64,000 nucleotides of DNA from Tubulanus polymorphus (lineage: Eukaryota; Animalia; Nemertea). How positions within the stretch are numbered: position 1 is the first letter of the stretch; every line of letters begins with the position of its first letter. Below the pieces are notes generated by a model, which ran no database searches, was not told the DNA's origin, and worked only from the letters and a program-made list of their open reading frames with translations. Location of the stretch: NCBI RefSeq assembly GCF_964204645.1, contig NC_134036.1, forward strand, positions 5,982,600-6,046,599, read 5' to 3'. Of the stretch, positions 37,060 to 48,000 are shown in pieces. Made by a program: the position numbers and the translations under genes.

Positions 37060-40000
37060 ATGGTGGATCGCGACGTCGAAAAACCATCGTTTCTGATATT
37101 AGGAGGTAATTTAGTCGGTATTCCGACACGACAACTTGTGGAAGACTATGACGCAGGTTGAATGACTATTCAATCGCCGGTTGTCACGCGTCATGCATTG
37201 CTCAGCGTCTAATTGCGTGTAGAATAATCCCACCAATTCAATTCAATCCAATCCTTATCCTAATTCCTACCTGTCCCGTGTTGTTGATGATGGGTGTGTA
37301 TCTTTATTGTGCCTGGCTATAGCACGTATTTATAGTGAGGGCGATTTGTTTGTTGACCTTCCTTAATACGTTCAAGTTCCGTACCGGAAAACCGCAGGCT
37401 GAGTATTGCTTTGCCTATCGAATAGGTTAGAATGTATATACAACTAATACTAATGTCTATTTATTAATGTATGAGACCTGTTTTTTTGCGATATCTTGCT
37501 TAGTATTTGTAGTACATACCTCATTTAGGTCTTATCGTGACCACAAAAGTCGCGGACGACATATGAATATCCGATATTTTATCCGTTAATCACCGTTTAG
37601 AAGGATTGGTAAGAAGTGTAGGAAATCGCATCTTAAATCGGCGAAAACAACCGCCATGTTCGTCTTTTTCCGGCTCATGTGCGCATGCGCTATGATGCGG
37701 AATTTCTGCGTAGGGGTGGTAGCTTTTGAATTTAATTAATGCTCAACGAATCACAGTGTTGCAATAGTGCGCTTATGCATATGCATTCAGGTTAATCGCT
37801 TAATAGTAAACACGTACAAACGAACGCGCAACACAATGAGCTTTTCAAAACCACAATGGGAAATCATAAATCTATTCACATCACACCTACGTCGAGAAGA
37901 GAGGACAGGCCGAAATATCCCAAACAACAACACCTACGAAAGAATTCGGGCCGCTCTCAAGAAAAAAGTATCCACAGAGTCGATTAAGAGGAATTACGGT
38001 ATGTCATAGAAGGAAGTCATGCGTTGTTTATTTACTATTATAATTAGCCACGAGCTGAAGGATCTCTCACTACACAAAAACAAAAACATTGATTTGAAGA
38101 GAACTGATGGAAATCATATCAATTAAAAACACTTTATTTTTCATATAATTATTTAGGCCTAGAGAAAGCCTGTTATAAATTTCATTTTAAGTAATAAACT
38201 ATATACACTTCAAAAATACAAAGGTAATTATTTTTCATAGGCCTATTACAAAAAAAAATCTTGATTAAAAAGACATGTTTCAAAACATATTATTAAAGAC
38301 CGGTTTTCTACATTCAGGCCTATAGAAAATCATACAATAGGCCTACAAACTTTTTAGTTAGGCTAAAAAAAATGATACCTTGTTTCTCCGCAGCAGCCGG
38401 GTCATTTTAGTAAAATATGATAAAATTTATAAACAGTTCATTTCTATAGCGGCCGGTATGTTATGGTAAAATTGATCACGATTTAAAAAAAAGTAATGTA
38501 TAGGGTAGATAGGCGGCCGGCCGGGTCAACATTTAAGCTCAGCAGAGCGGAGAAACAAGGTATCAATTTTTTTTAGCCTTACTCTTTTTTGCAAACCCTG
38601 CTGGTTCGATAAATGAACTTGAAGTCAATTTTCAATGGATTTTCAGAAAAAAAGTCTTCAGTAACTGAACCTAGTAAAACCGGACGTCCATCTATAGAAC
38701 TAGACCAATTTGATCAAGATATAATCCGAAGAGAAATTCATGATATGACCAGAGATAAGAAATACATTACAATAGATGGGTAAGAATCAACAACTGCCAG
38801 ACAAAACACATCCTCCCTGACAATGATTCCAACATGATTGCTTCAAGAGATCGCCACAGCCAAAAATCCAGCCAGAGTAGCCCGGATACATAAGCATTGC
38901 TCATCATTAGCTTATCAATGTCCATTGTCCAAGTTATCTCAACTATAATTATCCGCAAAATTTGCCTAAGGGGTCATTCATTTATTACGTATGCATTCGG
39001 GGAGGGGTCAGTGCAATTGCGTTCTGTGATGCTTAGTGTATATGAAAAAAATGGCCGATTTTGCGTACAGAGGGGAGGGGGGTTGAAAAATTCAAATTTT
39101 ATGCGTACGTAATAAATGAATGATCCCTAAGTGATCAGGTTATCTGATAATTGGTAAGCAAGTTTTCAGCAAAGCTGTGCACTAGGGCTAGTCAAGCTGG
39201 ATTTCATACTGCAGCAGTCTTGATGCCATCATTTTCGGATCCCTTCTGAGAGGGATGTGCAAATATGGATATTAAGGCTAAAAAAATTGATACCTTGTTT
39301 CTCCGCTCTGCTGAGCTTGTTGACCCGGCCGGCCACCTATCTACCCTATACATTACTTTTTTTAAAATCGTGATCAATTTTACCATAACAGACCCGGCCG
39401 CTATAGAAATGAACTGTTTATAAATTTCATCATATTTTACAAAAAATGACCCGGCCGCTGCGGAGAAACAAGGTATCATTTTTGTTTAGCCTAACAACAA
39501 AAATGTAACTATAAATTTACCATCCATCTTGGTACAGCAGATTTGAAATATTTGATCTCCATATTTATGTATTTATCTCTATAGAATATATGCGAGAATC
39601 AAAAACAAAATATCAGTTGACTTGAAAAGAGTTTCAATATGGAAATGGATAAGGAGAATTGGGTTCAGGTGGCTGAAGAAAAGTGGAAAACGGTAGGCAA
39701 AACAGTTTTATATCCGATAATTTTGATTAATTATCTGATGTTTCATAGGCCTTTGTATAGTGATTATCCCTGTTCCCTTCCAGTATGCCCTAAGATTGAT
39801 GTGTCAAATTGATCAATATCTAAAATCATTGTATCTTCTTTCAGCTTTAGTCATGAAAGACCCGACATTGTACGCCAAAGAAGAAACTATCTACGGAAAA
39901 TAAAAAAAGCTAGACAGGAGAACAAACAGATCGTATATTTGGATGAAACGTGGATAAATTCAAGAGATACAATGCAAGGTGAAACTTTAAAACACTAAGC

Positions 40001-41921
40001 CTAAGTTAGATTTTTGTATTTGAATCTACCAAGGGCCCATCAGCATAACAAAAATTGGGTCAACCTTACTCAAGATGGCCGTCCTAGGACCTTTTAAGTG
40101 CCCAAAAATGTTAATTTTGGCCCGAATTCCGAGTCCTGTAGCTTCCTACTGGTTTGCCATTTCTCATTGCAATTGCTGATTGACATTCTTTGGAAAGGGA
40201 TGTTTTATACCTGAGACAGGTATTTTTGATCAGCCAATTGGCGGCCATCTTGGTGTCATCAGTACTCATTCGTAGGTAGGAAAAAGTTTTTCCACATTAA
40301 ATTGATACCTAAGCATTATTGTGTTACTATATTCAATTGGAAAGTTGTAGCCCATAACGTGTTCTATGATTTTGGTGAGTTTCAAGGTCATTGGTTTTTG
40401 CATGTGGCCACCAGGGGGCGTTGAATAATACAATAACTTATTATTTCTATATTATATTTGTACCTATGCATATTTTGTTACCACAATCAATTACAAAGTT
40501 GTAGCTCATGACATCTTCAATGATTTTGGTGAGTTTTAAGGACATTAGGCTAAACAAAAATGATACCTTGTTTCTCCGCAGCGGCCGGGTCATTTTAGTA
40601 AAATATGATAAAATTTATAAACAGTTCATTTCTATAGCGGCCGGGTCTGTTATGGTAAAATTGATCACGATTTTTAAAAAAGTAATGTATAGAGTAGATA
40701 GGCGGCCGGCCGGGTCAACATTTAAGCTCAGCAGAGCGGAGAAACAAGGTATCAATTTTTTTTTAGCCTTAGTTATTCTATATGGTCACCAGGGGGTGTT
40801 GAATAGTAGAATAACTTAGCATTAGAGCCCACAGATAGAAGAACATATACAGCCTACAAGTAAAACTACAGTCAACCCCCACGATATACTGCGGGAGGGC
40901 GGTATATCGGGGTTGACTGTATAAAGAAATTACCAGGCAAAAATGTTCGAAAAAAAATTTTCATACAAAAGTTAAGTTTTCAGAAATTTTTTCCCCATAT
41001 TTTTCACATGCATCTTATCTCTGCTAAGACAAAGTACATTGTATGTTACCTGTTTTTAAACCTGGAATCACTATTATCTTCAACAGGCGAATGGACAGAA
41101 AATTGGGAAAAAGGAATGACCAACTTTTCCCATCCACCATGTAAGGATTGCGGACGAGTAGAGCAAAATGGTAAAGGTGCACGCCTAATCATTTTAGATG
41201 CAGGAAGTCGAAATGGCTTTGTGCCAGGTGCAAACCTAGTTTTTGAAGCGAAAAATGGTTCTGGAGATTATCATCACCAAATGGATGGTAAATATTATTA
41301 AGTCTTTGTTTTCAATATCCATATTAATGTCTATTTCAACTTGGCTTCAGAGCATATCAGATTGCCTAGCTCAGTCAGTTTTGGTGGTAAATATCTGGTA
41401 AGGGTCCTATTGGTTAAGTTTGAATTATTGTCCTCGTTGAAAACATGAAGTTTGAGTTAGACTCAAACTGTGAAACTTTTGTGAAACTAGGCCCAGGGGC
41501 CGGTTGCTCAAAAGTTGATTTAAAACAACCTTTGAGCAGCCAGCCCCTCCATAGCATAAATTGCTCTGATTGTGTGACAACTGATATCTCAAAAAAGTAT
41601 ACCCATCAAAAATATCACTCTCTAATAGTCGTATGAAAAATGCTGATCGCCTACAGCCTACATCAATCATCAATTTCGAAACTAATCATATTCTATGTGC
41701 TTTTCAGGAGACATATTCGAAACATGGCTCGAGGACCAATTGATTCCAGCATTAGAGGAACCTTCCCTTATAGTCATGGACCAAGCGTCATATCATCTCT
41801 GCTTAGTAAAGGAAAGTCAGGCTCCAAAAAGCTCACAGAGTAAAGAAGAGATCAAGGTATTAAAAAACCTAGATGGCCAGTTTTGAAAAATTGTTTTCAC
41901 AAATTCAATTTAAAGACATAT

Positions 41922-42000
<79 letters not shown>

Positions 42001-45000
42001 GCTCATCAGAATTTATGAAATCACTTTTTCAAAACTGGTTTCAAAATAATAAATTCCATCATATAAGATTTAAACCAAGGGAAACCCCATGTCTCAGAAA
42101 ACATCTCAGAAAACCATTGCATTAGGCCACACCAAAAGAAAACCCTGTTTCTCGGGCCCGACCGACCTGATATTTCGTCATTTCAAATAATCATTTTCAG
42201 AATAAAATATAATTATCATATTCCTGACTAAAAATTTAGTCCAGTAAAAACTATTTACGGCGACCTACCCACTGATAGAAGAATAACCGATATTTTTTTT
42301 CTATACAGAAAATAAATGTCCTACCTACCTACCCATTTTGGGATCATTCATTTATTACGTACGCATAAAATTTGAATTTTTCAACCCCCCTCCCCTCTGT
42401 ACGCAAAATCGGCCATTTTTGTCATATACACTAAGCATCACAGAACGCAATTGCACTGACCCCTCCCCGAATGCATACGTAATAAATGAATGACCCCTTA
42501 CAGTGCCATACAGGTTCAAGGAATGAAGTATCTATTTGGTATGCTTATGATGCTAATAACATTAAATTTTAATTTTAATTTTAAAATAAAATTTAATTTT
42601 TCAGAGATGGTTGGAAAAGAAAAAAGTGACATACGACCAAAATCTAAACAAACAACAACTTGTTAAACTATGTCAAACTCAGTCACCAAATAAACTTTAC
42701 AAATCAGAGCAGCTGATTCTCGATTCTGGACACGAGCTACTGATATTACCAGTCAAACATTGCGAGCTCAACCCAATTGAAATGGTTTGGCACCAGATTA
42801 AAGCATATGCAAAGAAAAAAAACACAACAAATAAACTGAAGGATGTGGAAAAGCTAATCATTGAAGGGAGAGAACAAGTCACGGCGGAAAATTGGAGAAA
42901 CTACGAGGATCATGTGAAGAAAATCGAAAACGAATTATGGATTAAGGACAAATTATCAGACAATCTAGTAAAAAATTTTGAAACTAATCATATTGTAATA
43001 AATCTGAATGATAGTGATGAGAGTGAGGATGAGAGAGAAAATGAGAGAGAGAATCAGGGTGCGGAAGATGACAGTGAGAAAGATGGAAATATGTCTAGTG
43101 AGGGAGATGAGAGCGAGAATGAGGTTTGTGCGGTGTGTGGAGAGAAGGATGATTGTGGAGATGATCAGCTGGTTGAATGGGTAGCTTGTAGTATGTGTGA
43201 TCGCTGGTTCCATGTTTCTTGTTTAACCAATCATGATTCAGAAAATTTCAAATGCAAAAGATGTGAAGATATTCTATGCAAATCAATGTACTTTTTGGAA
43301 CCGTAAATTATCCAATCATATCTTAGAAATTCATTTACTTCAATCATTTGATGTACATGTATATATCATCTAAACTGGTTTATTTCTAAGTATCGAATTT
43401 AAATGACATTGTTTCCAGAACGAAGGCTCTTTGACTGTGCAACTGAGCATATATTCATACAAATCACTCATTAAAGCATTACCCATTCTCCAAACTAGCT
43501 GAATTTTGAAAAAGGGCCTCGTTAAAATTTATGAGCTTTTTCACGAAAATCTGATCGTAATAATATCTGTTTTAAAAAGCCAATCAGAAAGCAAAGACTC
43601 CTCTATGATTGGCTTCGCCGCAGAAATCAGCAGGTGTTCACGTGAACCCGCGGTAATTTCAACTGTTTTACTTCCGGGTTTTATTTTAAGATCTAAAATT
43701 TTATTTCAATATAGATTTCTGCGAAATCTTTACTTCATTTGATTTTTGGGAGGAATACTTTTAATTGCACCACAGAAAATATCATAGAAAATTGTGCCAA
43801 GTCCGGGGAAAAAAGCTTTTTCTCAAATCGGATGGATGACCTTGATATGCTATTGTGTTAATTATTAGGTATTGACTAGTCTGAGTGCCCCTTGGGGCTC
43901 TTGTTTTTATCTGACCCGTAAATATTCGATACGGCCAAGTGGCGACAATTGTTGTTCGCCATAATTAGCCATGTTTACACATTTGTTTTTAAGTGAAATT
44001 TCCTTGGGCAGGGCAATCACCAAAATGGGTAGGTAGGCAGGACATTTTTTTTACTTTTTATAGAAAAAAAATATCATTCATTCTTCTATCAGTGGGTAGG
44101 TTGCCGTAAATAATTTTTACTGGACTAAATTTTTAGTCAGGAATATGATTAACAGCTAGTAGACTACAATAATAAAAGGATAATCCAAAGTCGCCATCAA
44201 AGTTGTCTGAGCATTTTGGTTTCCATAGACAAGTGGCTGTCCAATATCAATAGTAGATAAAAACCCACAATAAAAAGAAAAACTATCTGGTAGCTTAACG
44301 TTTCAACTCAATTCTATGAGCAATTTTCAAAAACTAAATCAGTTTTTGAAAATGGCTCATAGAATTAAGTTGATAGTTTTTCTTTTTATTGTCGGTTTTT
44401 ATCTACTATTGTCTGAGCATGGCTGCGCCATTTCCAGAATCAAATCTTAAATCCGATATAATAAAATGTTTTTATGATGCTGATCTGTGCCGACATAATA
44501 ATTTGGTAAAAAAATATCTACGAGAAAGGAGTTCGGTCGGCCACATATATATTTTTGAAAAGAGTTATTTGACCTAAAATTTTGAAAAAGGGTCGGTAGG
44601 CGATTATATTTTATTCTGAAAATGATTATTTGAAATGGGGAAATATCGGGTCGGTCGGGCCCGAGAAACAGGGTTTTCTTTTGGTGTGGCCTAAGTGCAA
44701 TTGCGTACACTGTAATGCTTAATGTTCATGAAAAAATAATGTAATTGTAAATAGTGCAAACCTCTATGTATCTATGTTATCTTGTCTGTAATCTGTCAAT
44801 ACAGTTCAACGTTAATTAAATATTATATTATGTTATTATTGTTTGTATTGTGGCTGAAAATGGGTATCTACACGTCTCGAAGATAAACCTTTTTCCCTTT
44901 TTACTAAACTGATGAAACACATCCATTGATCAAAAACCTGTTTGACAGAACCCTACCGAAGGTGTACTACAGAAATTTCAATAAAAATGCAAACGGAACC

Positions 45001-48000
45001 ATCTGTACAGAACTCAGGATTTAGACCTCAAAATTGACCCGATTAACTCCCGGTAAAACAGAATAAGCCGGAATTGCATTCAGCCAAGCAGGCTATAAAT
45101 TACCGATTAGACTTAGGATGATTAACTGCATTCGTTGAGACCACAAATTTGCTTCGTCATATTCTGTATCCTGGTTTAAATCTACCGAGTGGATGATTTG
45201 TCGCGTACACCGAATAAACCAAGAAGTATAGATCCTTCGATTTGCAGCAATTTCTTGACCACGTTCAATGTCATGCGCATTTGAATTATCTGACAGACCA
45301 AAAACCATTCAACAATGTTGGGTAATCTTGCAAAGCTCCTTGAACACACTCTGAAATTAAAATGTTACATGAACAATCCAATAGGATTAGTTTGAAAACC
45401 GGTAGGACAGTGAATGGTATTCAGTGAAACTCGCAGAAATTGCTTTTTCAGTATGCATTGCCATTGGTCCGGTTTTTAAACTAAGTAAATTTCATAAAAA
45501 TCGAAAATATTCAACTTATCTATAAGCCGTACATCGGGTAAGTTCAATAAATTTGATTGGGTCCAACAAGTACGACTTATATGTGGACTAGTTATTGTGT
45601 AAATAAAAAGTTTGATCTACCTCCACTCCATGTCCATGTCCTACTTTCCTTTCCAACTACCTACATATTCAGCCATGATTGATGAAAACTGCGGGACGGA
45701 CCATGAACTCTCTTCCCAAAAATTCAGTTCAACTAAAAAAAGCAACTGCGCATTAGGTCTTTAATTCATTTCGAACTAGCTGAATGAAGGGTTACTGTCC
45801 ATGACTTACCTTATTGAGCATTTCCGACAGAGAGCAACATTAGGCGTTGTGTACCTCCCCCCGCGCCGCGCACACGAGGAGAGCGCGGTGCGGTTGGTTC
45901 CCTTCATCATCCATCCATGCTACGGGATCGAAGATATGTGCGGTTTTTCAAAGCGTTACCAATTTCTTTACAAAAAGCGAATCATCTTAAATAACACTAC
46001 GTGGTAATTGTACTCACGCTTACGCTTCAGTCTAAGACGTACAAAAGTGATTTCTTGCCAATCCCGACTAAAAAAAACGGCATTTTACGAGAGTTCGGGA
46101 GTTCTTCAGACTCAGAGTTGGCGGCAAAATGGTAGCTAGCCACACGTGTTTGCATAACCTAACCAACCCGCAAAAAATAAACTCGCCCAGATCACATGAC
46201 TAAAAACGCTCATTAGCATATGCATGAGCCGGAAAAAGACGAACATGGCGGTTGTTTTCGCCGATTTAAGATGCGATTTCCTACACTTCTTACCAATCCT
46301 TCTAAACGGTGATAAACGAATAAAATATCGGATATTCATATGTCGTCCGCGACTTTTGTGGTCACGATAAGACCTAAATGAGGTATGTACTACAAATACT
46401 AAGCAAGATATCGCGAAAAAACAGGTCTCATACATTAATAAATAGACATTAGGCCTAAACGAGTCCATCGGCAGGGATTACTAACATTTAAGATTGGCCA
46501 GACGTCCAGACAAATATATTTCATAGACTGCGCATTTATGTGATCGTGATAAAATTTAGGATACAAATGTAGCCTACTGTTAGAGCAAATGATGGTAAAA
46601 ATGTAGCACCGGTTCAGGTATAGGCCTAAATAAATAGAAACAAAAATAGGCCTAGGCCAATATCAAAACAATATAGGCCTACGCAAGGAATGCAATTCAG
46701 TAGGCCTACCAGTACCGGTAAGGCACAGGATTAGTAAATGTTCGTTTCAGTATTTTTAACCTGCATAAATGGCATGGTAGTTTTTAGATATTGTACCGGT
46801 ATGTAGGCCTACAAGGCCTCCATAAAAACGTGGACTTTAGTTCATGTAACTGATATGGTACATTGAGTAGTATGATTACTCATTTTGCGGCCTTGCTGGA
46901 GTTACTATTGTACATATTATTGTACACAACCCTCTTTCAATTTGTATTCATTGAAACATTTGCTATTACAGGGTATGGCCTTGTTTTACCCTAGATTGTC
47001 TTGTACATAAACAGTGCAAAACCTGTAGGCCTACATCAATCAATCATTCAGGCTACCACGAGAATGATGCTGTAGGCTATACAATTGGCTTCATCGGCCT
47101 AGGTGTTCATCACGAGATCTAAATGCATCATTGGGGATCCATTCCCCCCCCCCCCCCGATTTCTAAGATCGCCTAGACTGGTCTTAAAACTAAGTATGAT
47201 AGCCTTAGTCCGGTCTTGAATGCAGAATCTAAGATAGGCTAACCTTAGACCGTTAGACTGGTCTTGAATCTAACTAAGACAGCCTTAGCCTGGTCTTAAA
47301 TATCACTAAGATAACCTAAGCCTGGTCTTAAATCTCACTAAGATGACCTTAGCCTGGTCTTAAATCTCACTAAGATAACCTTAGCCTGGTCTTAAATCTC
47401 ACTAAGATAACCTTAGCCTGGTCTTAAATCTCACTAAGATTACCTAAGCCTGGTCTTAAATATCACTAAGATAACCTAAGCCTGGTCTTAAATCTCACTA
47501 AGATAACCTTAGCCTGGTCTTAAATCTCACTAAGATAACCTTAGCCTGGTCTTAAATCTCACTAAGATTACCTAAGCCTGGTCTTAAATATCACTAAGAT
47601 AACCTTAGCCTGGTCTTAAATCTCACTAAGATTACCTAAGCCTGGTCTTAAATATCACTAAGATAACCTTAGCCTGGTCTTAAATCTCACTAAGATTACC
47701 TAAGCCTGGTCTTAAATATCACTAAGATAACCTTAGCCTGGTCTTAAATCTAACTAAGATAACCTTAGCCTGGTCTTAAATCTCACTAAGATAACTTTAG
47801 ATAACCTTAGACCGTTAGAACTGTCTTGAATCTAACTAAGATAGCCTTAGCCTGGTCTTAAATCTCACTAAGATAACCTTAGATAACCTTGGCCAAGTCT
47901 TAAATCTAACTAAGATAACCTTAGCCTGGTCTTAAATCTCACTAAGATAACTTTAGATAACCTTAGACCGTTAGAACTGTCTTGAATCTAACTAAGATAA

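What the first reader, a model, noticed from the sequence alone, without database searches (positions are those of the whole stretch)
37453..46449. Intact-looking ~9-kb Sailor-like transposon with a six-intron transposase
Seen: ~227-bp near-identical TIRs, TA duplication, and seven in-phase exons encoding 529 aa with a complete D-D-E triad. I count 83 residues between the second D (MDQASYH) and E (NPIE). Known: spacing near 82 defines the Sailor (DD82E) group of IS630-Tc1-mariner, and most elements of this superfamily are 1-3 kb with few or no introns. Inference: a large, spliced, recently mobile subfamily that ORF-based annotation would miss; only the last exon appears as a long ORF.
Basis: partly seen in the sequence, partly recalled or inferred. 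Interest (0 to 1): 0.85.

Follow-up and report, generated by a model that had tools for sequence, protein, structure and literature searches.

The report
Intron-bearing Sailor transposon with PHD finger
This is a real 9-kb cut-and-paste transposon of the ribbon worm Tubulanus polymorphus. Its Sailor-type transposase gene is split by six introns and ends in a histone-reader-like PHD finger, which makes it an unusual member of a known superfamily, not a new kind of element.

Summary
Window 37453-46449 is bounded by 227-nt inverted repeats with 3 mismatches and by a TA duplication. Seven GT-AG exons give 529 codons with D168, D271 and E355, and 83 residues lie between the second D and the E.

Taken one at a time, the exons tile positions 14-451 of a 453-position profile built from intronless relatives. 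That same profile recovers the Legionella and Desulfobulbaceae loci published as Sailor. NCBI's model for a second copy uses the last two junctions.

The genome (Tubulanus polymorphus, Nemertea) holds two copies with all seven exons open: this one and one on contig C10, 97.5-99% identical, in different unique flanks. It also holds several degraded copies and a 542-bp MITE family with related ends. All 39 distinct termini abut TA, and 36 of them abut C-TA.

Introns are older than the current copies. A roughly 90% identical relic keeps the splice sites it retains, with different intron lengths. Part of the 9 kb is high-copy MITEs nested in introns.

The C-terminal PHD finger recurs in relatives from mussels and metagenomes.

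No RNA run exists, so splicing is inferred. My verdict is a new variant of a known kind, of moderate interest.

The parts
37451..37452 (.). Left TA target-site duplication, preceded by C at 37450
   Evidence: TA at 39 of 39 termini, and C at position -3 in 36 of 39.
37453..37679 (+). Left terminal inverted repeat, 227 nt, starting ATGTCTATTTATTAATG
   Evidence: Blocks 1-33, 57-82, 92-125 and 145-165 are shared with the MITE family's TIR.
37836..37998 (+). Exon 1 (start codon; N-terminal region), donor GTATGT
   Evidence: Profile positions 14-57 (weak, E = 0.01). Identical in the C10 copy.
38647..38779 (+). Exon 2 (GRP..DxF..IRR block of the DNA-binding region)
   Evidence: profile positions 76-108. 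match to P0006 residues 77-107.
39585..39692 (+). Exon 3 (second helix-turn-helix-like block, ..RRIGFRWLKK..)
   Evidence: profile positions 112-144.
39845..39978 (+). Exon 4, with the first catalytic D (IVYLDETW)
   Evidence: profile positions 150-189.
41087..41287 (+). Exon 5 (GKGARLIILDAGS.. beta-strand block)
   Evidence: profile positions 195-252. Its donor is used in NCBI model P0001.
41708..41856 (+). Exon 6, with the second catalytic D (LIVMDQASYH)
   Evidence: profile positions 255-300. Both of its junctions are in NCBI model P0001.
42605..43306 (+). Exon 7: catalytic E (HCELNPIEM), acidic linker, C4HC3 PHD finger (about 43119-43256), stop codon
38365..38573 (.). Nested very-high-copy ~210-bp MITE in intron 1. 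The same MITE lies at 39280-39494 (intron 2) and 40545-40762 (intron 4)
   Evidence: I6-I12. depth about 600 times that of the exons. Absent from the old copy L037.
43307..46222 (.). 3' non-coding part, 2.9 kb. It is specific to this family except for a nested ~460-bp high-copy repeat (43394-43852) and a 164-bp palindromic insert (44248-44411)
   Evidence: No ORF there has a Pfam match.
46223..46449 (-). Right terminal inverted repeat
46450..46451 (.). Right TA target-site duplication, followed by G at 46452

Best explanation
The locus is an autonomous cut-and-paste DNA transposon of the Sailor (DD82E-type) branch of IS630-Tc1-mariner, in the nemertean Tubulanus polymorphus.

Shown:
- The element has 227-nt TIRs and a TA duplication in a C-TA-G target.
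- Its gene has seven exons, and their products tile the whole Sailor transposase profile with an intact D-D-83-E triad.
- A C4HC3 PHD finger follows the catalytic core, joined to it by an acidic linker that the model leaves disordered.
- A second copy with all exons open, several degraded copies and a MITE family with related ends exist elsewhere in the genome.

Inferred mechanism:
- The gene is transcribed from inside the element and six spliceosomal introns are removed.
- The 529-aa transposase binds conserved blocks in the long TIRs through its N-terminal helix-turn-helix region.
- It excises the whole 9-kb unit, introns and nested MITEs included, and reinserts it at TA inside CTAG. It also moves the 542-bp MITEs in trans.
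- Because transposition goes through DNA, introns and passenger MITEs are copied with the element. Introns therefore act as safe landing sites for other repeats, and the element has grown to 9 kb.
- The PHD finger probably tethers the transposase to histone H3 tails, possibly methylated K4, and so biases where it lands. This last step is the most speculative.
For: **Ends, target and copies**
- TIRs and TSD.
- Target: 39 of 39 termini abut TA and 36 of 39 abut C-TA. Twelve complete elements are all flanked TA..TA.
- The window and C10 copies have all seven exons open and every GT-AG site kept. They are 97.5-99% identical over the full length. The window copy's flanks are unique in the assembly and unlike the C10 flanks.
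- Exon 6 occurs in 9 places at 91-100% identity.
- The MITEs are 542 bp, on average 95% alike, and their TIR is 80% like the autonomous one.

**Exon model**
- Exon-by-exon tiling of the family profile.
- Intronless relatives align colinearly across the junctions.
- Splice sites are conserved while intron lengths vary between copies, for example intron 1 at 648, 641 and 329 bp, and intron 5 at 420 and 1740 bp.

**Sailor membership**
- Published loci recovered.
- Profile scores.
- Tree.
- Published motifs.

**Fold and PHD**
- The profile's only PDB hit is the Sleeping Beauty catalytic domain (5cr4), and 5cr4 is also the best structural match of the catalytic module.
- Pfam finds a PHD finger.
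- The best PDB sequence match (E = 7e-5) and the best fold match are both the Alfin-like 3 PHD finger (5yc3), solved with H3K4me2.
- Both Trp residues of W..C..C..WFH are kept in all PHD-bearing relatives.
Against: - No RNA data. The four runs that hold the stretch look like DNA, with contigs running across the introns and none joining exon to exon. The one possible RNA run holds nothing of the gene.
- NCBI's model covers only exons 5-7 and starts at an internal Met, so junctions 1-4 rest on homology and splice consensus alone.
- No empty allele or insertion polymorphism was found, so current activity is unproven.
- The differences between the two copies in exon 7 include at least two amino-acid changes. 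There is no sign of purifying selection between copies, and too few differences to test for it.
- The Sailor clade has only 82% SH-aLRT support, and the protein's position inside it is unresolved on a long branch.
- The TSD is TA, not the TATA reported for most Sailors.
- The histone specificity of the PHD finger is inferred from sequence and fold similarity only. Foldseek E-values are weak, at 0.016-0.03.
Confidence: 0.85

Rival explanations
1. It is a dead relic. The element is a true Sailor-type transposon, but none of its copies moves any more. The open exons then reflect only how recent the last burst was.
For: - No RNA evidence and no empty site.
- Most copies are degraded. The C1 copy lacks exons 3, 4 and 7. 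The C6 copy has a 1-bp insertion in exon 5. The two C2 copies carry stops.
- The two best copies differ by 1-2.5%, and the arms of the window TIR differ by 1.3%.
Against: - Two copies keep all seven exons open and all twelve splice dinucleotides.
- The TA duplications are intact.
- MITE copies reach 99.3% pairwise identity.
- NCBI models a protein from the C10 copy.
Confidence: 0.3
2. The interruptions are not spliceosomal introns. They are insertions and decay that broke an originally continuous ORF, so no full-length protein is made. The GT-AG ends would then be fortuitous.
For: - Relatives are intronless.
- Four of the six interruptions contain high-copy repeats.
- Junctions 1-4 have no transcript or gene-model support.
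Against: - All six interruptions have GT..AG ends, with a pyrimidine-rich tract before the acceptor of every junction printed (junction 5), and joining them restores the frame exactly.
- The exons meet with gaps of at most 6 profile positions, except between exons 1 and 2.
- Intron 3 is 152 bp in every copy where exons 3 and 4 could both be placed, and it holds no repeat.
- The ~90% relic L037 lacks the nested MITEs yet has the same exon boundaries.
- Exon lengths are constant while intron lengths vary up to four-fold.
- Gnomon uses two of the junctions.
Confidence: 0.07
3. It is a domesticated host gene derived from a Sailor transposase, like the TLEWI genes of bivalves, and not a mobile element.
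For: - It has a gene-like exon-intron structure and an added chromatin-reader domain.
- TLEWI sets a precedent for intron-bearing Tc1-like genes thought to be co-opted (10.1101/656579).
Against: - It has long TIRs and TSDs, and many copies at unrelated unique sites, several of them decayed. It also has a MITE family with the same termini.
- The nearest relative outside the species is only 37% identical, so no conserved orthologue is visible.
Confidence: 0.03

Closest known systems
Sailor (DD82E) superfamily of IS630-Tc1-mariner transposons (Shi et al. 2021, PMC8533490)
   Same: - It has the same catalytic signatures: I/VVYLDET, a VIIMDNA-like motif and HCELNPIE.
- Its D-E spacing of 83 is the commonest value in the paper's molluscs and annelid.
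- Long TIRs occur in the family: Haliotis rubra has 235/237 bp.
- My family profile retrieves the paper's own Legionella (JAACPN010000008.1) and Desulfobulbaceae (JAABQY010000010.1) loci.
   Different: - Published elements are 1.4-7 kb, and the paper reports no introns for them. This one is 9 kb with six introns.
- The duplication is TA within C-TA-G, not the TATA reported for most Sailors. The next two bases (AT) are inverted, not direct, so they belong to the TIR.
- It carries a C-terminal PHD finger, which the paper does not mention.
- Its host phylum, Nemertea, is absent from the paper's list.
TLEWI, Tc1-like elements with spliceosomal introns in bivalves (Puzakov et al., 10.1101/656579)
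   Same: It is an IS630-Tc1-mariner transposase gene interrupted by spliceosomal introns, in a lophotrochozoan.
   Different: TLEWI are DD36E, lack TIRs, are low-copy and are read as domesticated. This element is DD83E (Sailor) and has TIRs, TSDs, many copies and MITEs.
PHD-bearing Sailor-like proteins of Mytilus (CAG2214270.1 and relatives) and of metagenomic contigs (P0003, P0005 cluster)
   Same: They share a Sailor catalytic core followed by a C4HC3 PHD finger with the W..C..C..W(F/L/Y)H pattern. They are 35-39% identical to the C10 copy's protein P0001 over the aligned part.
   Different: They are essentially intronless. P0005 is 410 aa in 1233 bp. The Mytilus model has only a 65-bp gap, at a position that matches none of the introns here. 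I found no TIRs around them.
Sleeping Beauty / Tc1 transposases
   Same: They share the RNase H-like DDE catalytic fold. The best structural match of the catalytic module is PDB 5cr4. They also share the TA duplication and long TIRs.
   Different: They are DD34E, with a short D-E spacer, no introns and no PHD finger. The Sailor profile scores the Tubulanus Tc1-like copies at only 19-20 bits.

Membership tests
Sailor (DD82E) superfamily | DDE triad with a long second spacer (DD78E-DD111E, mostly 82-83) | tested here: met
   83 residues between the D of VMDQA and the E of NPIE. The published range is given.
Sailor (DD82E) superfamily | Signature motifs I/VVYLDET, VIIMDNA and HCELNPIEL | tested here: met
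   IVYLDET, LIVMDQA (Q in place of N) and HCELNPIEM.
Sailor (DD82E) superfamily | Groups with published Sailor sequences, apart from Tc1/mariner and IS630 | tested here: met
   - Profile A1 retrieves the Table S6 loci L112 and L092.
- Sailor loci score 240-512 bits and IS630 and Tc1 loci 16-36 bits.
- In the tree the Sailor clade has SH-aLRT 82, Tc1 100 and IS630 97.
- The paper's own reference alignment could not be loaded, so pogo, Gambol and Zator were not included.
Sailor (DD82E) superfamily | 4-bp TATA target-site duplication (predominant, not universal) | tested here: not met
   Only TA is duplicated. The flanks read C-TA..TA-G in nearly all of the 39 termini.
Sailor (DD82E) superfamily | TIRs that usually start with GT or CC | tested here: inconclusive
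   The element starts ATGTCTA. GT follows at bases 3-4, so the difference may lie only in how the TSD and TIR are delimited.
IS630-Tc1-mariner group | TA target duplication, TIRs, and an RNase H-like DDE domain after an N-terminal helix-turn-helix region | tested here: met
   - TA and TIRs.
- Pfam DDE_3 on exons 6 and 7, below the cut-off for single exons. Over the cut-off on P0001, at 37.4 bits.
- Sleeping Beauty catalytic domain as best fold match.
- The helix-turn-helix region is supported only by colinearity with the family profile.
TLEWI (intron-bearing Tc1-like genes of bivalves) | DD36E signature, no TIRs, low copy number | tested here: not met
   DD83E, 227-nt TIRs, and at least 9 copies plus MITEs.
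PHD finger (C4HC3 zinc finger, histone H3 tail reader) | C-x2-C-x(n)-C-x2-C-x4-H-x2-C-x(n)-C-x2-C pattern and PHD fold | tested here: met
   - Pattern present.
- Pfam PHD at E = 3e-4, 21 bits, below the 24-bit cut-off.
- PDB sequence hit to the ALFIN-LIKE 3 PHD finger at E = 7e-5.
- The model's residues 278-335 have pLDDT 77-90 and match 5yc3 with a target-normalised TM-score of 0.66.
- Histone binding itself cannot be tested with these tools.

The most novel reading that the evidence does not exclude
A lineage of autonomous DNA transposons has carried spliceosomal introns through many rounds of transposition. A second Tubulanus family, only about 50-60% identical, appears to break at the same exon 6 boundaries.

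Its transposase uses an H3K4me-reading PHD finger to steer integration towards active chromatin. That would be a chromatin-tethering strategy known from retroelement integrases, here in an IS630-Tc1-mariner element. Introns would serve both as a eukaryote-only expression lock and as tolerated landing pads for other MITEs, which would explain the growth to 9 kb.
Probability: 0.3. Interest if true: 0.72.

Novelty: new variant of a known kind. Interest (0 to 1): 0.5.

Why it matters
- **Annotation.** Sailor was described from ORF-type elements, and this example has six introns. ORF-based or tblastn-based TE mining (the paper used E = 1e-100 and 2-kb flanks) would miss or truncate such elements. 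NCBI's own annotation models only the last three exons, as an "uncharacterized protein".
- **Biology of mobile elements.** It is a case of an IS630-Tc1-mariner element that is gene-like and apparently still mobile. The only intron-bearing precedent I found (TLEWI) lacks TIRs and is read as domesticated.
- **Target choice.** The PHD finger, conserved in a subgroup that spans nemertean, mussel and metagenomic sequences, offers a testable route to chromatin-guided target choice in a cut-and-paste transposon. That is of interest for TE biology and for transposon vector design.
- **Distribution.** It adds Nemertea to the known hosts of Sailor.

Tried and rejected
- **RNA evidence.** The look-up of sequencing runs listed no run on record as RNA. 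Read laying on 37700-43400 gave only DNA-like contigs that cover the introns, and none joining exon to exon. The 2015 run guessed to be RNA held only a repeat fragment. Splicing could therefore be neither confirmed nor refuted.
- **Empty allele.** Both flanks of the window copy are single-copy in the assembly. Joined MITE flanks found no uninterrupted paralogue among the fetched loci.
- **Second gene in the 3' 2.9 kb.** No ORF over 110 aa and no Pfam hit, so I rejected this.
- **Introns created wholesale by MITE insertion (introner-like).** Rejected. Intron 3 (152 bp) shows no repeat, and intron 5 (420 bp) no very-high-copy one. The relic L037 has intron 1 without the MITE.
- **Segmental duplication of the C12 and C10 copies.** Rejected, because the flanks differ and each copy has its own TA..TA.
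- **Shared introns with the Mytilus relative.** Not found. That model has only a 65-bp gap at a different position.
- **TIRs around the Mytilus and ENA relatives.** None convincing.
- **Internal direct repeats in the TIR (IR-DR type).** None at a seed of 7.
- **More genome DNA.** I tried to fetch the C4 copy, the diverged C2 and C3 families and the end of the C6 copy. Intactness of the C4 copy, and shared intron positions in the diverged family, therefore rest on match coordinates only.
- **Host gene.** The other first-reader note says the element lies about 400 bp after a host start codon. I saw no obvious host exon in six-frame translations of the flanks and did not pursue it.
- **Joined protein.** It was built only inside local scripts, to check frame, length and spacing. 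It was not sent to any search, fold or database tool. All searches used single exons by reference or the database protein P0001.


Full report
**What is there**

The window is G000:C12:5982600-6046599 of a 268-Mb assembly. The source name of the nearest database protein identifies the organism as the palaeonemertean Tubulanus polymorphus.

The longest inverted repeat in the region has arms at 37450-37679 and 46223-46452, 230 nt and 99% complementary. Reading both ends and comparing 39 distinct family termini puts the element at 37453-46449. It runs ATGTCTATT...AATAGACAT. TA lies outside both ends in 39 of 39 termini, and C lies before the TA in 36 of 39.

All twelve complete elements with both ends in hand read C-TA[element]TA, and in ten of them G follows. 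No direct repeat exists beyond the C and G. The simplest reading is a 2-bp TA duplication at a CTAG-like target.

The Sailor paper reports mostly TATA. Here the two bases inside the TA are AT on the left and AT on the right when read inward. They are therefore inverted and belong to the TIR, not to a 4-bp duplication.

**The gene**

Three-frame translation shows seven stop-free pieces on the + strand. Among in-phase GT..AG combinations, one set has good consensus at every junction.

- The exons are 37836-37998, 38647-38779, 39585-39692, 39845-39978, 41087-41287, 41708-41856 and 42605-43306.
- The introns are 648, 805, 152, 1108, 420 and 748 bp.
- The total is 529 codons.

The catalytic residues sit in YLDET, VMDQA and NPIE, with 83 residues between the last two.

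I did not send the joined protein to any search tool. Instead I searched each exon translation alone against a profile of 25 relatives (A1, 453 positions). The hits were consecutive: 14-57, 76-108, 112-144, 150-189, 195-252, 255-300 and 301-451.

Full-length relatives of 440-500 aa, encoded without interruption on contigs of 1.7-2.5 kb, align colinearly over exons 4-7, and one of them also over exon 2. NCBI's protein for the C10 copy (LOC141912265, 340 aa) joins exons 5, 6 and 7 at exactly these junctions.

There is no RNA evidence. The runs that hold the stretch behave as DNA, and none is on record as RNA.

**Copies**

- **TIR search.** It finds full-length partners on C10 (8.8 kb), C1 (7.0 kb), C6 (10 kb) and C4. 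It also finds solo ends and more than 25 copies of a 542-bp MITE whose 164-167-nt TIRs are about 80% like the autonomous TIR.
- **C10 copy.** It is 97.5-99% identical over the whole length. It has all seven exons open and every splice dinucleotide kept.
- **Other copies.** The C6 copy has a 1-bp insertion in exon 5. The C1 copy lacks exons 3, 4 and 7. Two C2 copies (88%) carry stops. Exon 6 alone occurs nine times at 91-100% identity.
- **Independent insertions.** The flanks of the window copy are unique in the assembly and differ from those of C10. These are separate insertions, not a duplication.

**Why it is 9 kb**

Read depth along the gene is about 100-240 over the exons. It rises to 10^4-10^5 in parts of introns 1, 2, 4 and 6. 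The inverted-repeat map shows one ~210-bp MITE three times, at 38365-38573, 39280-39494 and 40545-40762. The 3' 2.9 kb has no coding signal and holds two more nested repeats.

A ~90% identical relic (L037) keeps the GT-AG boundaries of the four exons that could be placed in it (1, 2, 3 and 5). It lacks these MITEs, and its intron 1 is 329 bp against 648 bp. Across copies, exon lengths are constant and intron lengths vary up to four-fold.

The introns are therefore older than the present copies. They have since collected passenger repeats, and the element has carried those along when it moved.

Match coordinates also suggest that a second Tubulanus family, about 50-60% identical (C2 near 16.42 Mb), breaks at both boundaries of exon 6. 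Several families at 35-45% identity run straight through those positions. I could not fetch these loci to check.

**Family**

The motifs and spacing fit Sailor as defined in PMC8533490: I/VVYLDET, VIIMDNA, HCELNPIEL, DD78-111E, with DD83E usual in molluscs and the annelid.

- **Published loci recovered.** The A1 profile, scanned over bacterial and archaeal genomes, returned JAACPN010000008.1 (Legionella sp.) and JAABQY010000010.1 (Desulfobulbaceae) at the coordinates listed in the paper's Table S6. It also returned other contigs of the RPGQ01 Desulfobacteraceae assembly, one contig of which that table lists.
- **Profile scores.** Those loci score 240-512 bits. Canonical IS630 copies from the same bacteria and Tc1-like copies from Tubulanus score 16-36 bits.
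- **Tree.** In a 49-row maximum-likelihood tree the Tubulanus protein falls in the eukaryote-type Sailor group, next to the bacterial Sailor clade. It is apart from Tc1 (100) and IS630 (97). Support for the Sailor clade is 82, and the protein's place inside it is unresolved.
- **Nearest relatives.** The nearest protein outside the species is a Mytilus edulis protein at 37% identity.
- **Literature.** Nemertea is not in the paper's host list. I found no paper in the library on introns or PHD fingers in Sailor.

**The PHD finger**

The last exon ends in a C4HC3 pattern, and Pfam finds a PHD finger at E = 3e-4.

- **Closest solved sequence.** It is the ALFIN-LIKE 3 PHD finger, at E = 7e-5.
- **Structure model.** An AlphaFold model of the C10 protein has three parts: a confident catalytic module, a disordered acidic linker (235-277) and a confident small domain (278-335). 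The best Foldseek matches are 5yc3 (AL3 PHD bound to H3K4me2) for the small domain and 5cr4 (Sleeping Beauty catalytic domain) for the catalytic module. The E-values are weak, at 0.016-0.03.
- **Relatives.** The same finger, with both Trp residues of W..C..C..W(F/L/Y)H, follows the catalytic core in proteins from Mytilus, from an ENA assembly with eukaryote-size contigs, and from metagenomes. None of the typical 440-500-aa Sailors retrieved has it.

The suggestion that it reads methylated H3K4 and guides integration is an inference from these similarities and from my general knowledge of PHD readers. Nothing here tests it.

**Verdict**

The element is a member of a known superfamily with an unusual build: six introns, a PHD finger, 9 kb, a C-TA-G target and a new host phylum.

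The main gap is transcript evidence. Current activity is plausible but unproven.

Noticed in passing
Protein P0004 (XP_074643883.1), encoded on another contig of the same genome: NCBI's 'cytosol aminopeptidase-like isoform X3' of T. polymorphus begins with 65 residues that are 86% identical to the transposase stretch around the catalytic E. After that it is a normal M17 peptidase. Either a fragment of this transposon family has become an exon, or the gene model is wrong.
   Followed up: partly
window 38365-38573, 39280-39494, 40545-40762: One ~210-bp MITE of very high copy number sits in three different introns of the transposase gene. Its read depth is about 600 times that of the exons. Other copies of the element show joints that skip it.
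   Followed up: partly
L013-L030 (for example G000:C10:6987005-6987552): A 542-bp MITE family has 164-167-nt TIRs that share four long conserved blocks with the autonomous TIR. It has the same TA/C-TA-G flanks, a mean pairwise identity of 95% and a maximum of 99.3%.
   Followed up: yes
L031:9316-9340 (G000:C10, right end of the C10 copy): The C10 copy abuts another terminus of the same family head to head, with a single shared TA (..AAATAGACAT TA ATGTCTATTT..). It looks like an insertion into the TA that flanked an older element.
   Followed up: no
G000:C4:11404319-11404996 (L120); C6:12214157; C3:19740622; C2:13084080: The same genome holds several other Sailor-like families, 35-45% identical, that run uninterrupted across the positions of introns 5 and 6. 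A family of about 50-60% identity at C2:16417519-16423679 seems to share the exon 6 boundaries and the PHD region.
   Followed up: partly
Relatives P0006, P0002 and others (precomputed Pfam column): The source database labels part of these transposases PF27940 'C21orf140-like', and one thrips homologue is named 'Protein FAM243A'. This hints that the vertebrate gene of that name may derive from a Sailor-type transposase. The local Pfam copy did not report this family.
   Followed up: no
L057, L063 (archaeal MAG bins); L040-L042 (Dehalococcoidia and SUP05 bins): Sailor-type ORFs appear in MAGs labelled as archaea. Among the loci placed in the tree, those from the Dehalococcoidia and SUP05 bins group with eukaryote-type sequences and not with the bacterial Sailor clade. 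This could be binning contamination or real transfer.
   Followed up: no
window 41926-42000: A (TA)n microsatellite of about 70 bp lies in intron 6. Read contigs appear cut there.
   Followed up: no
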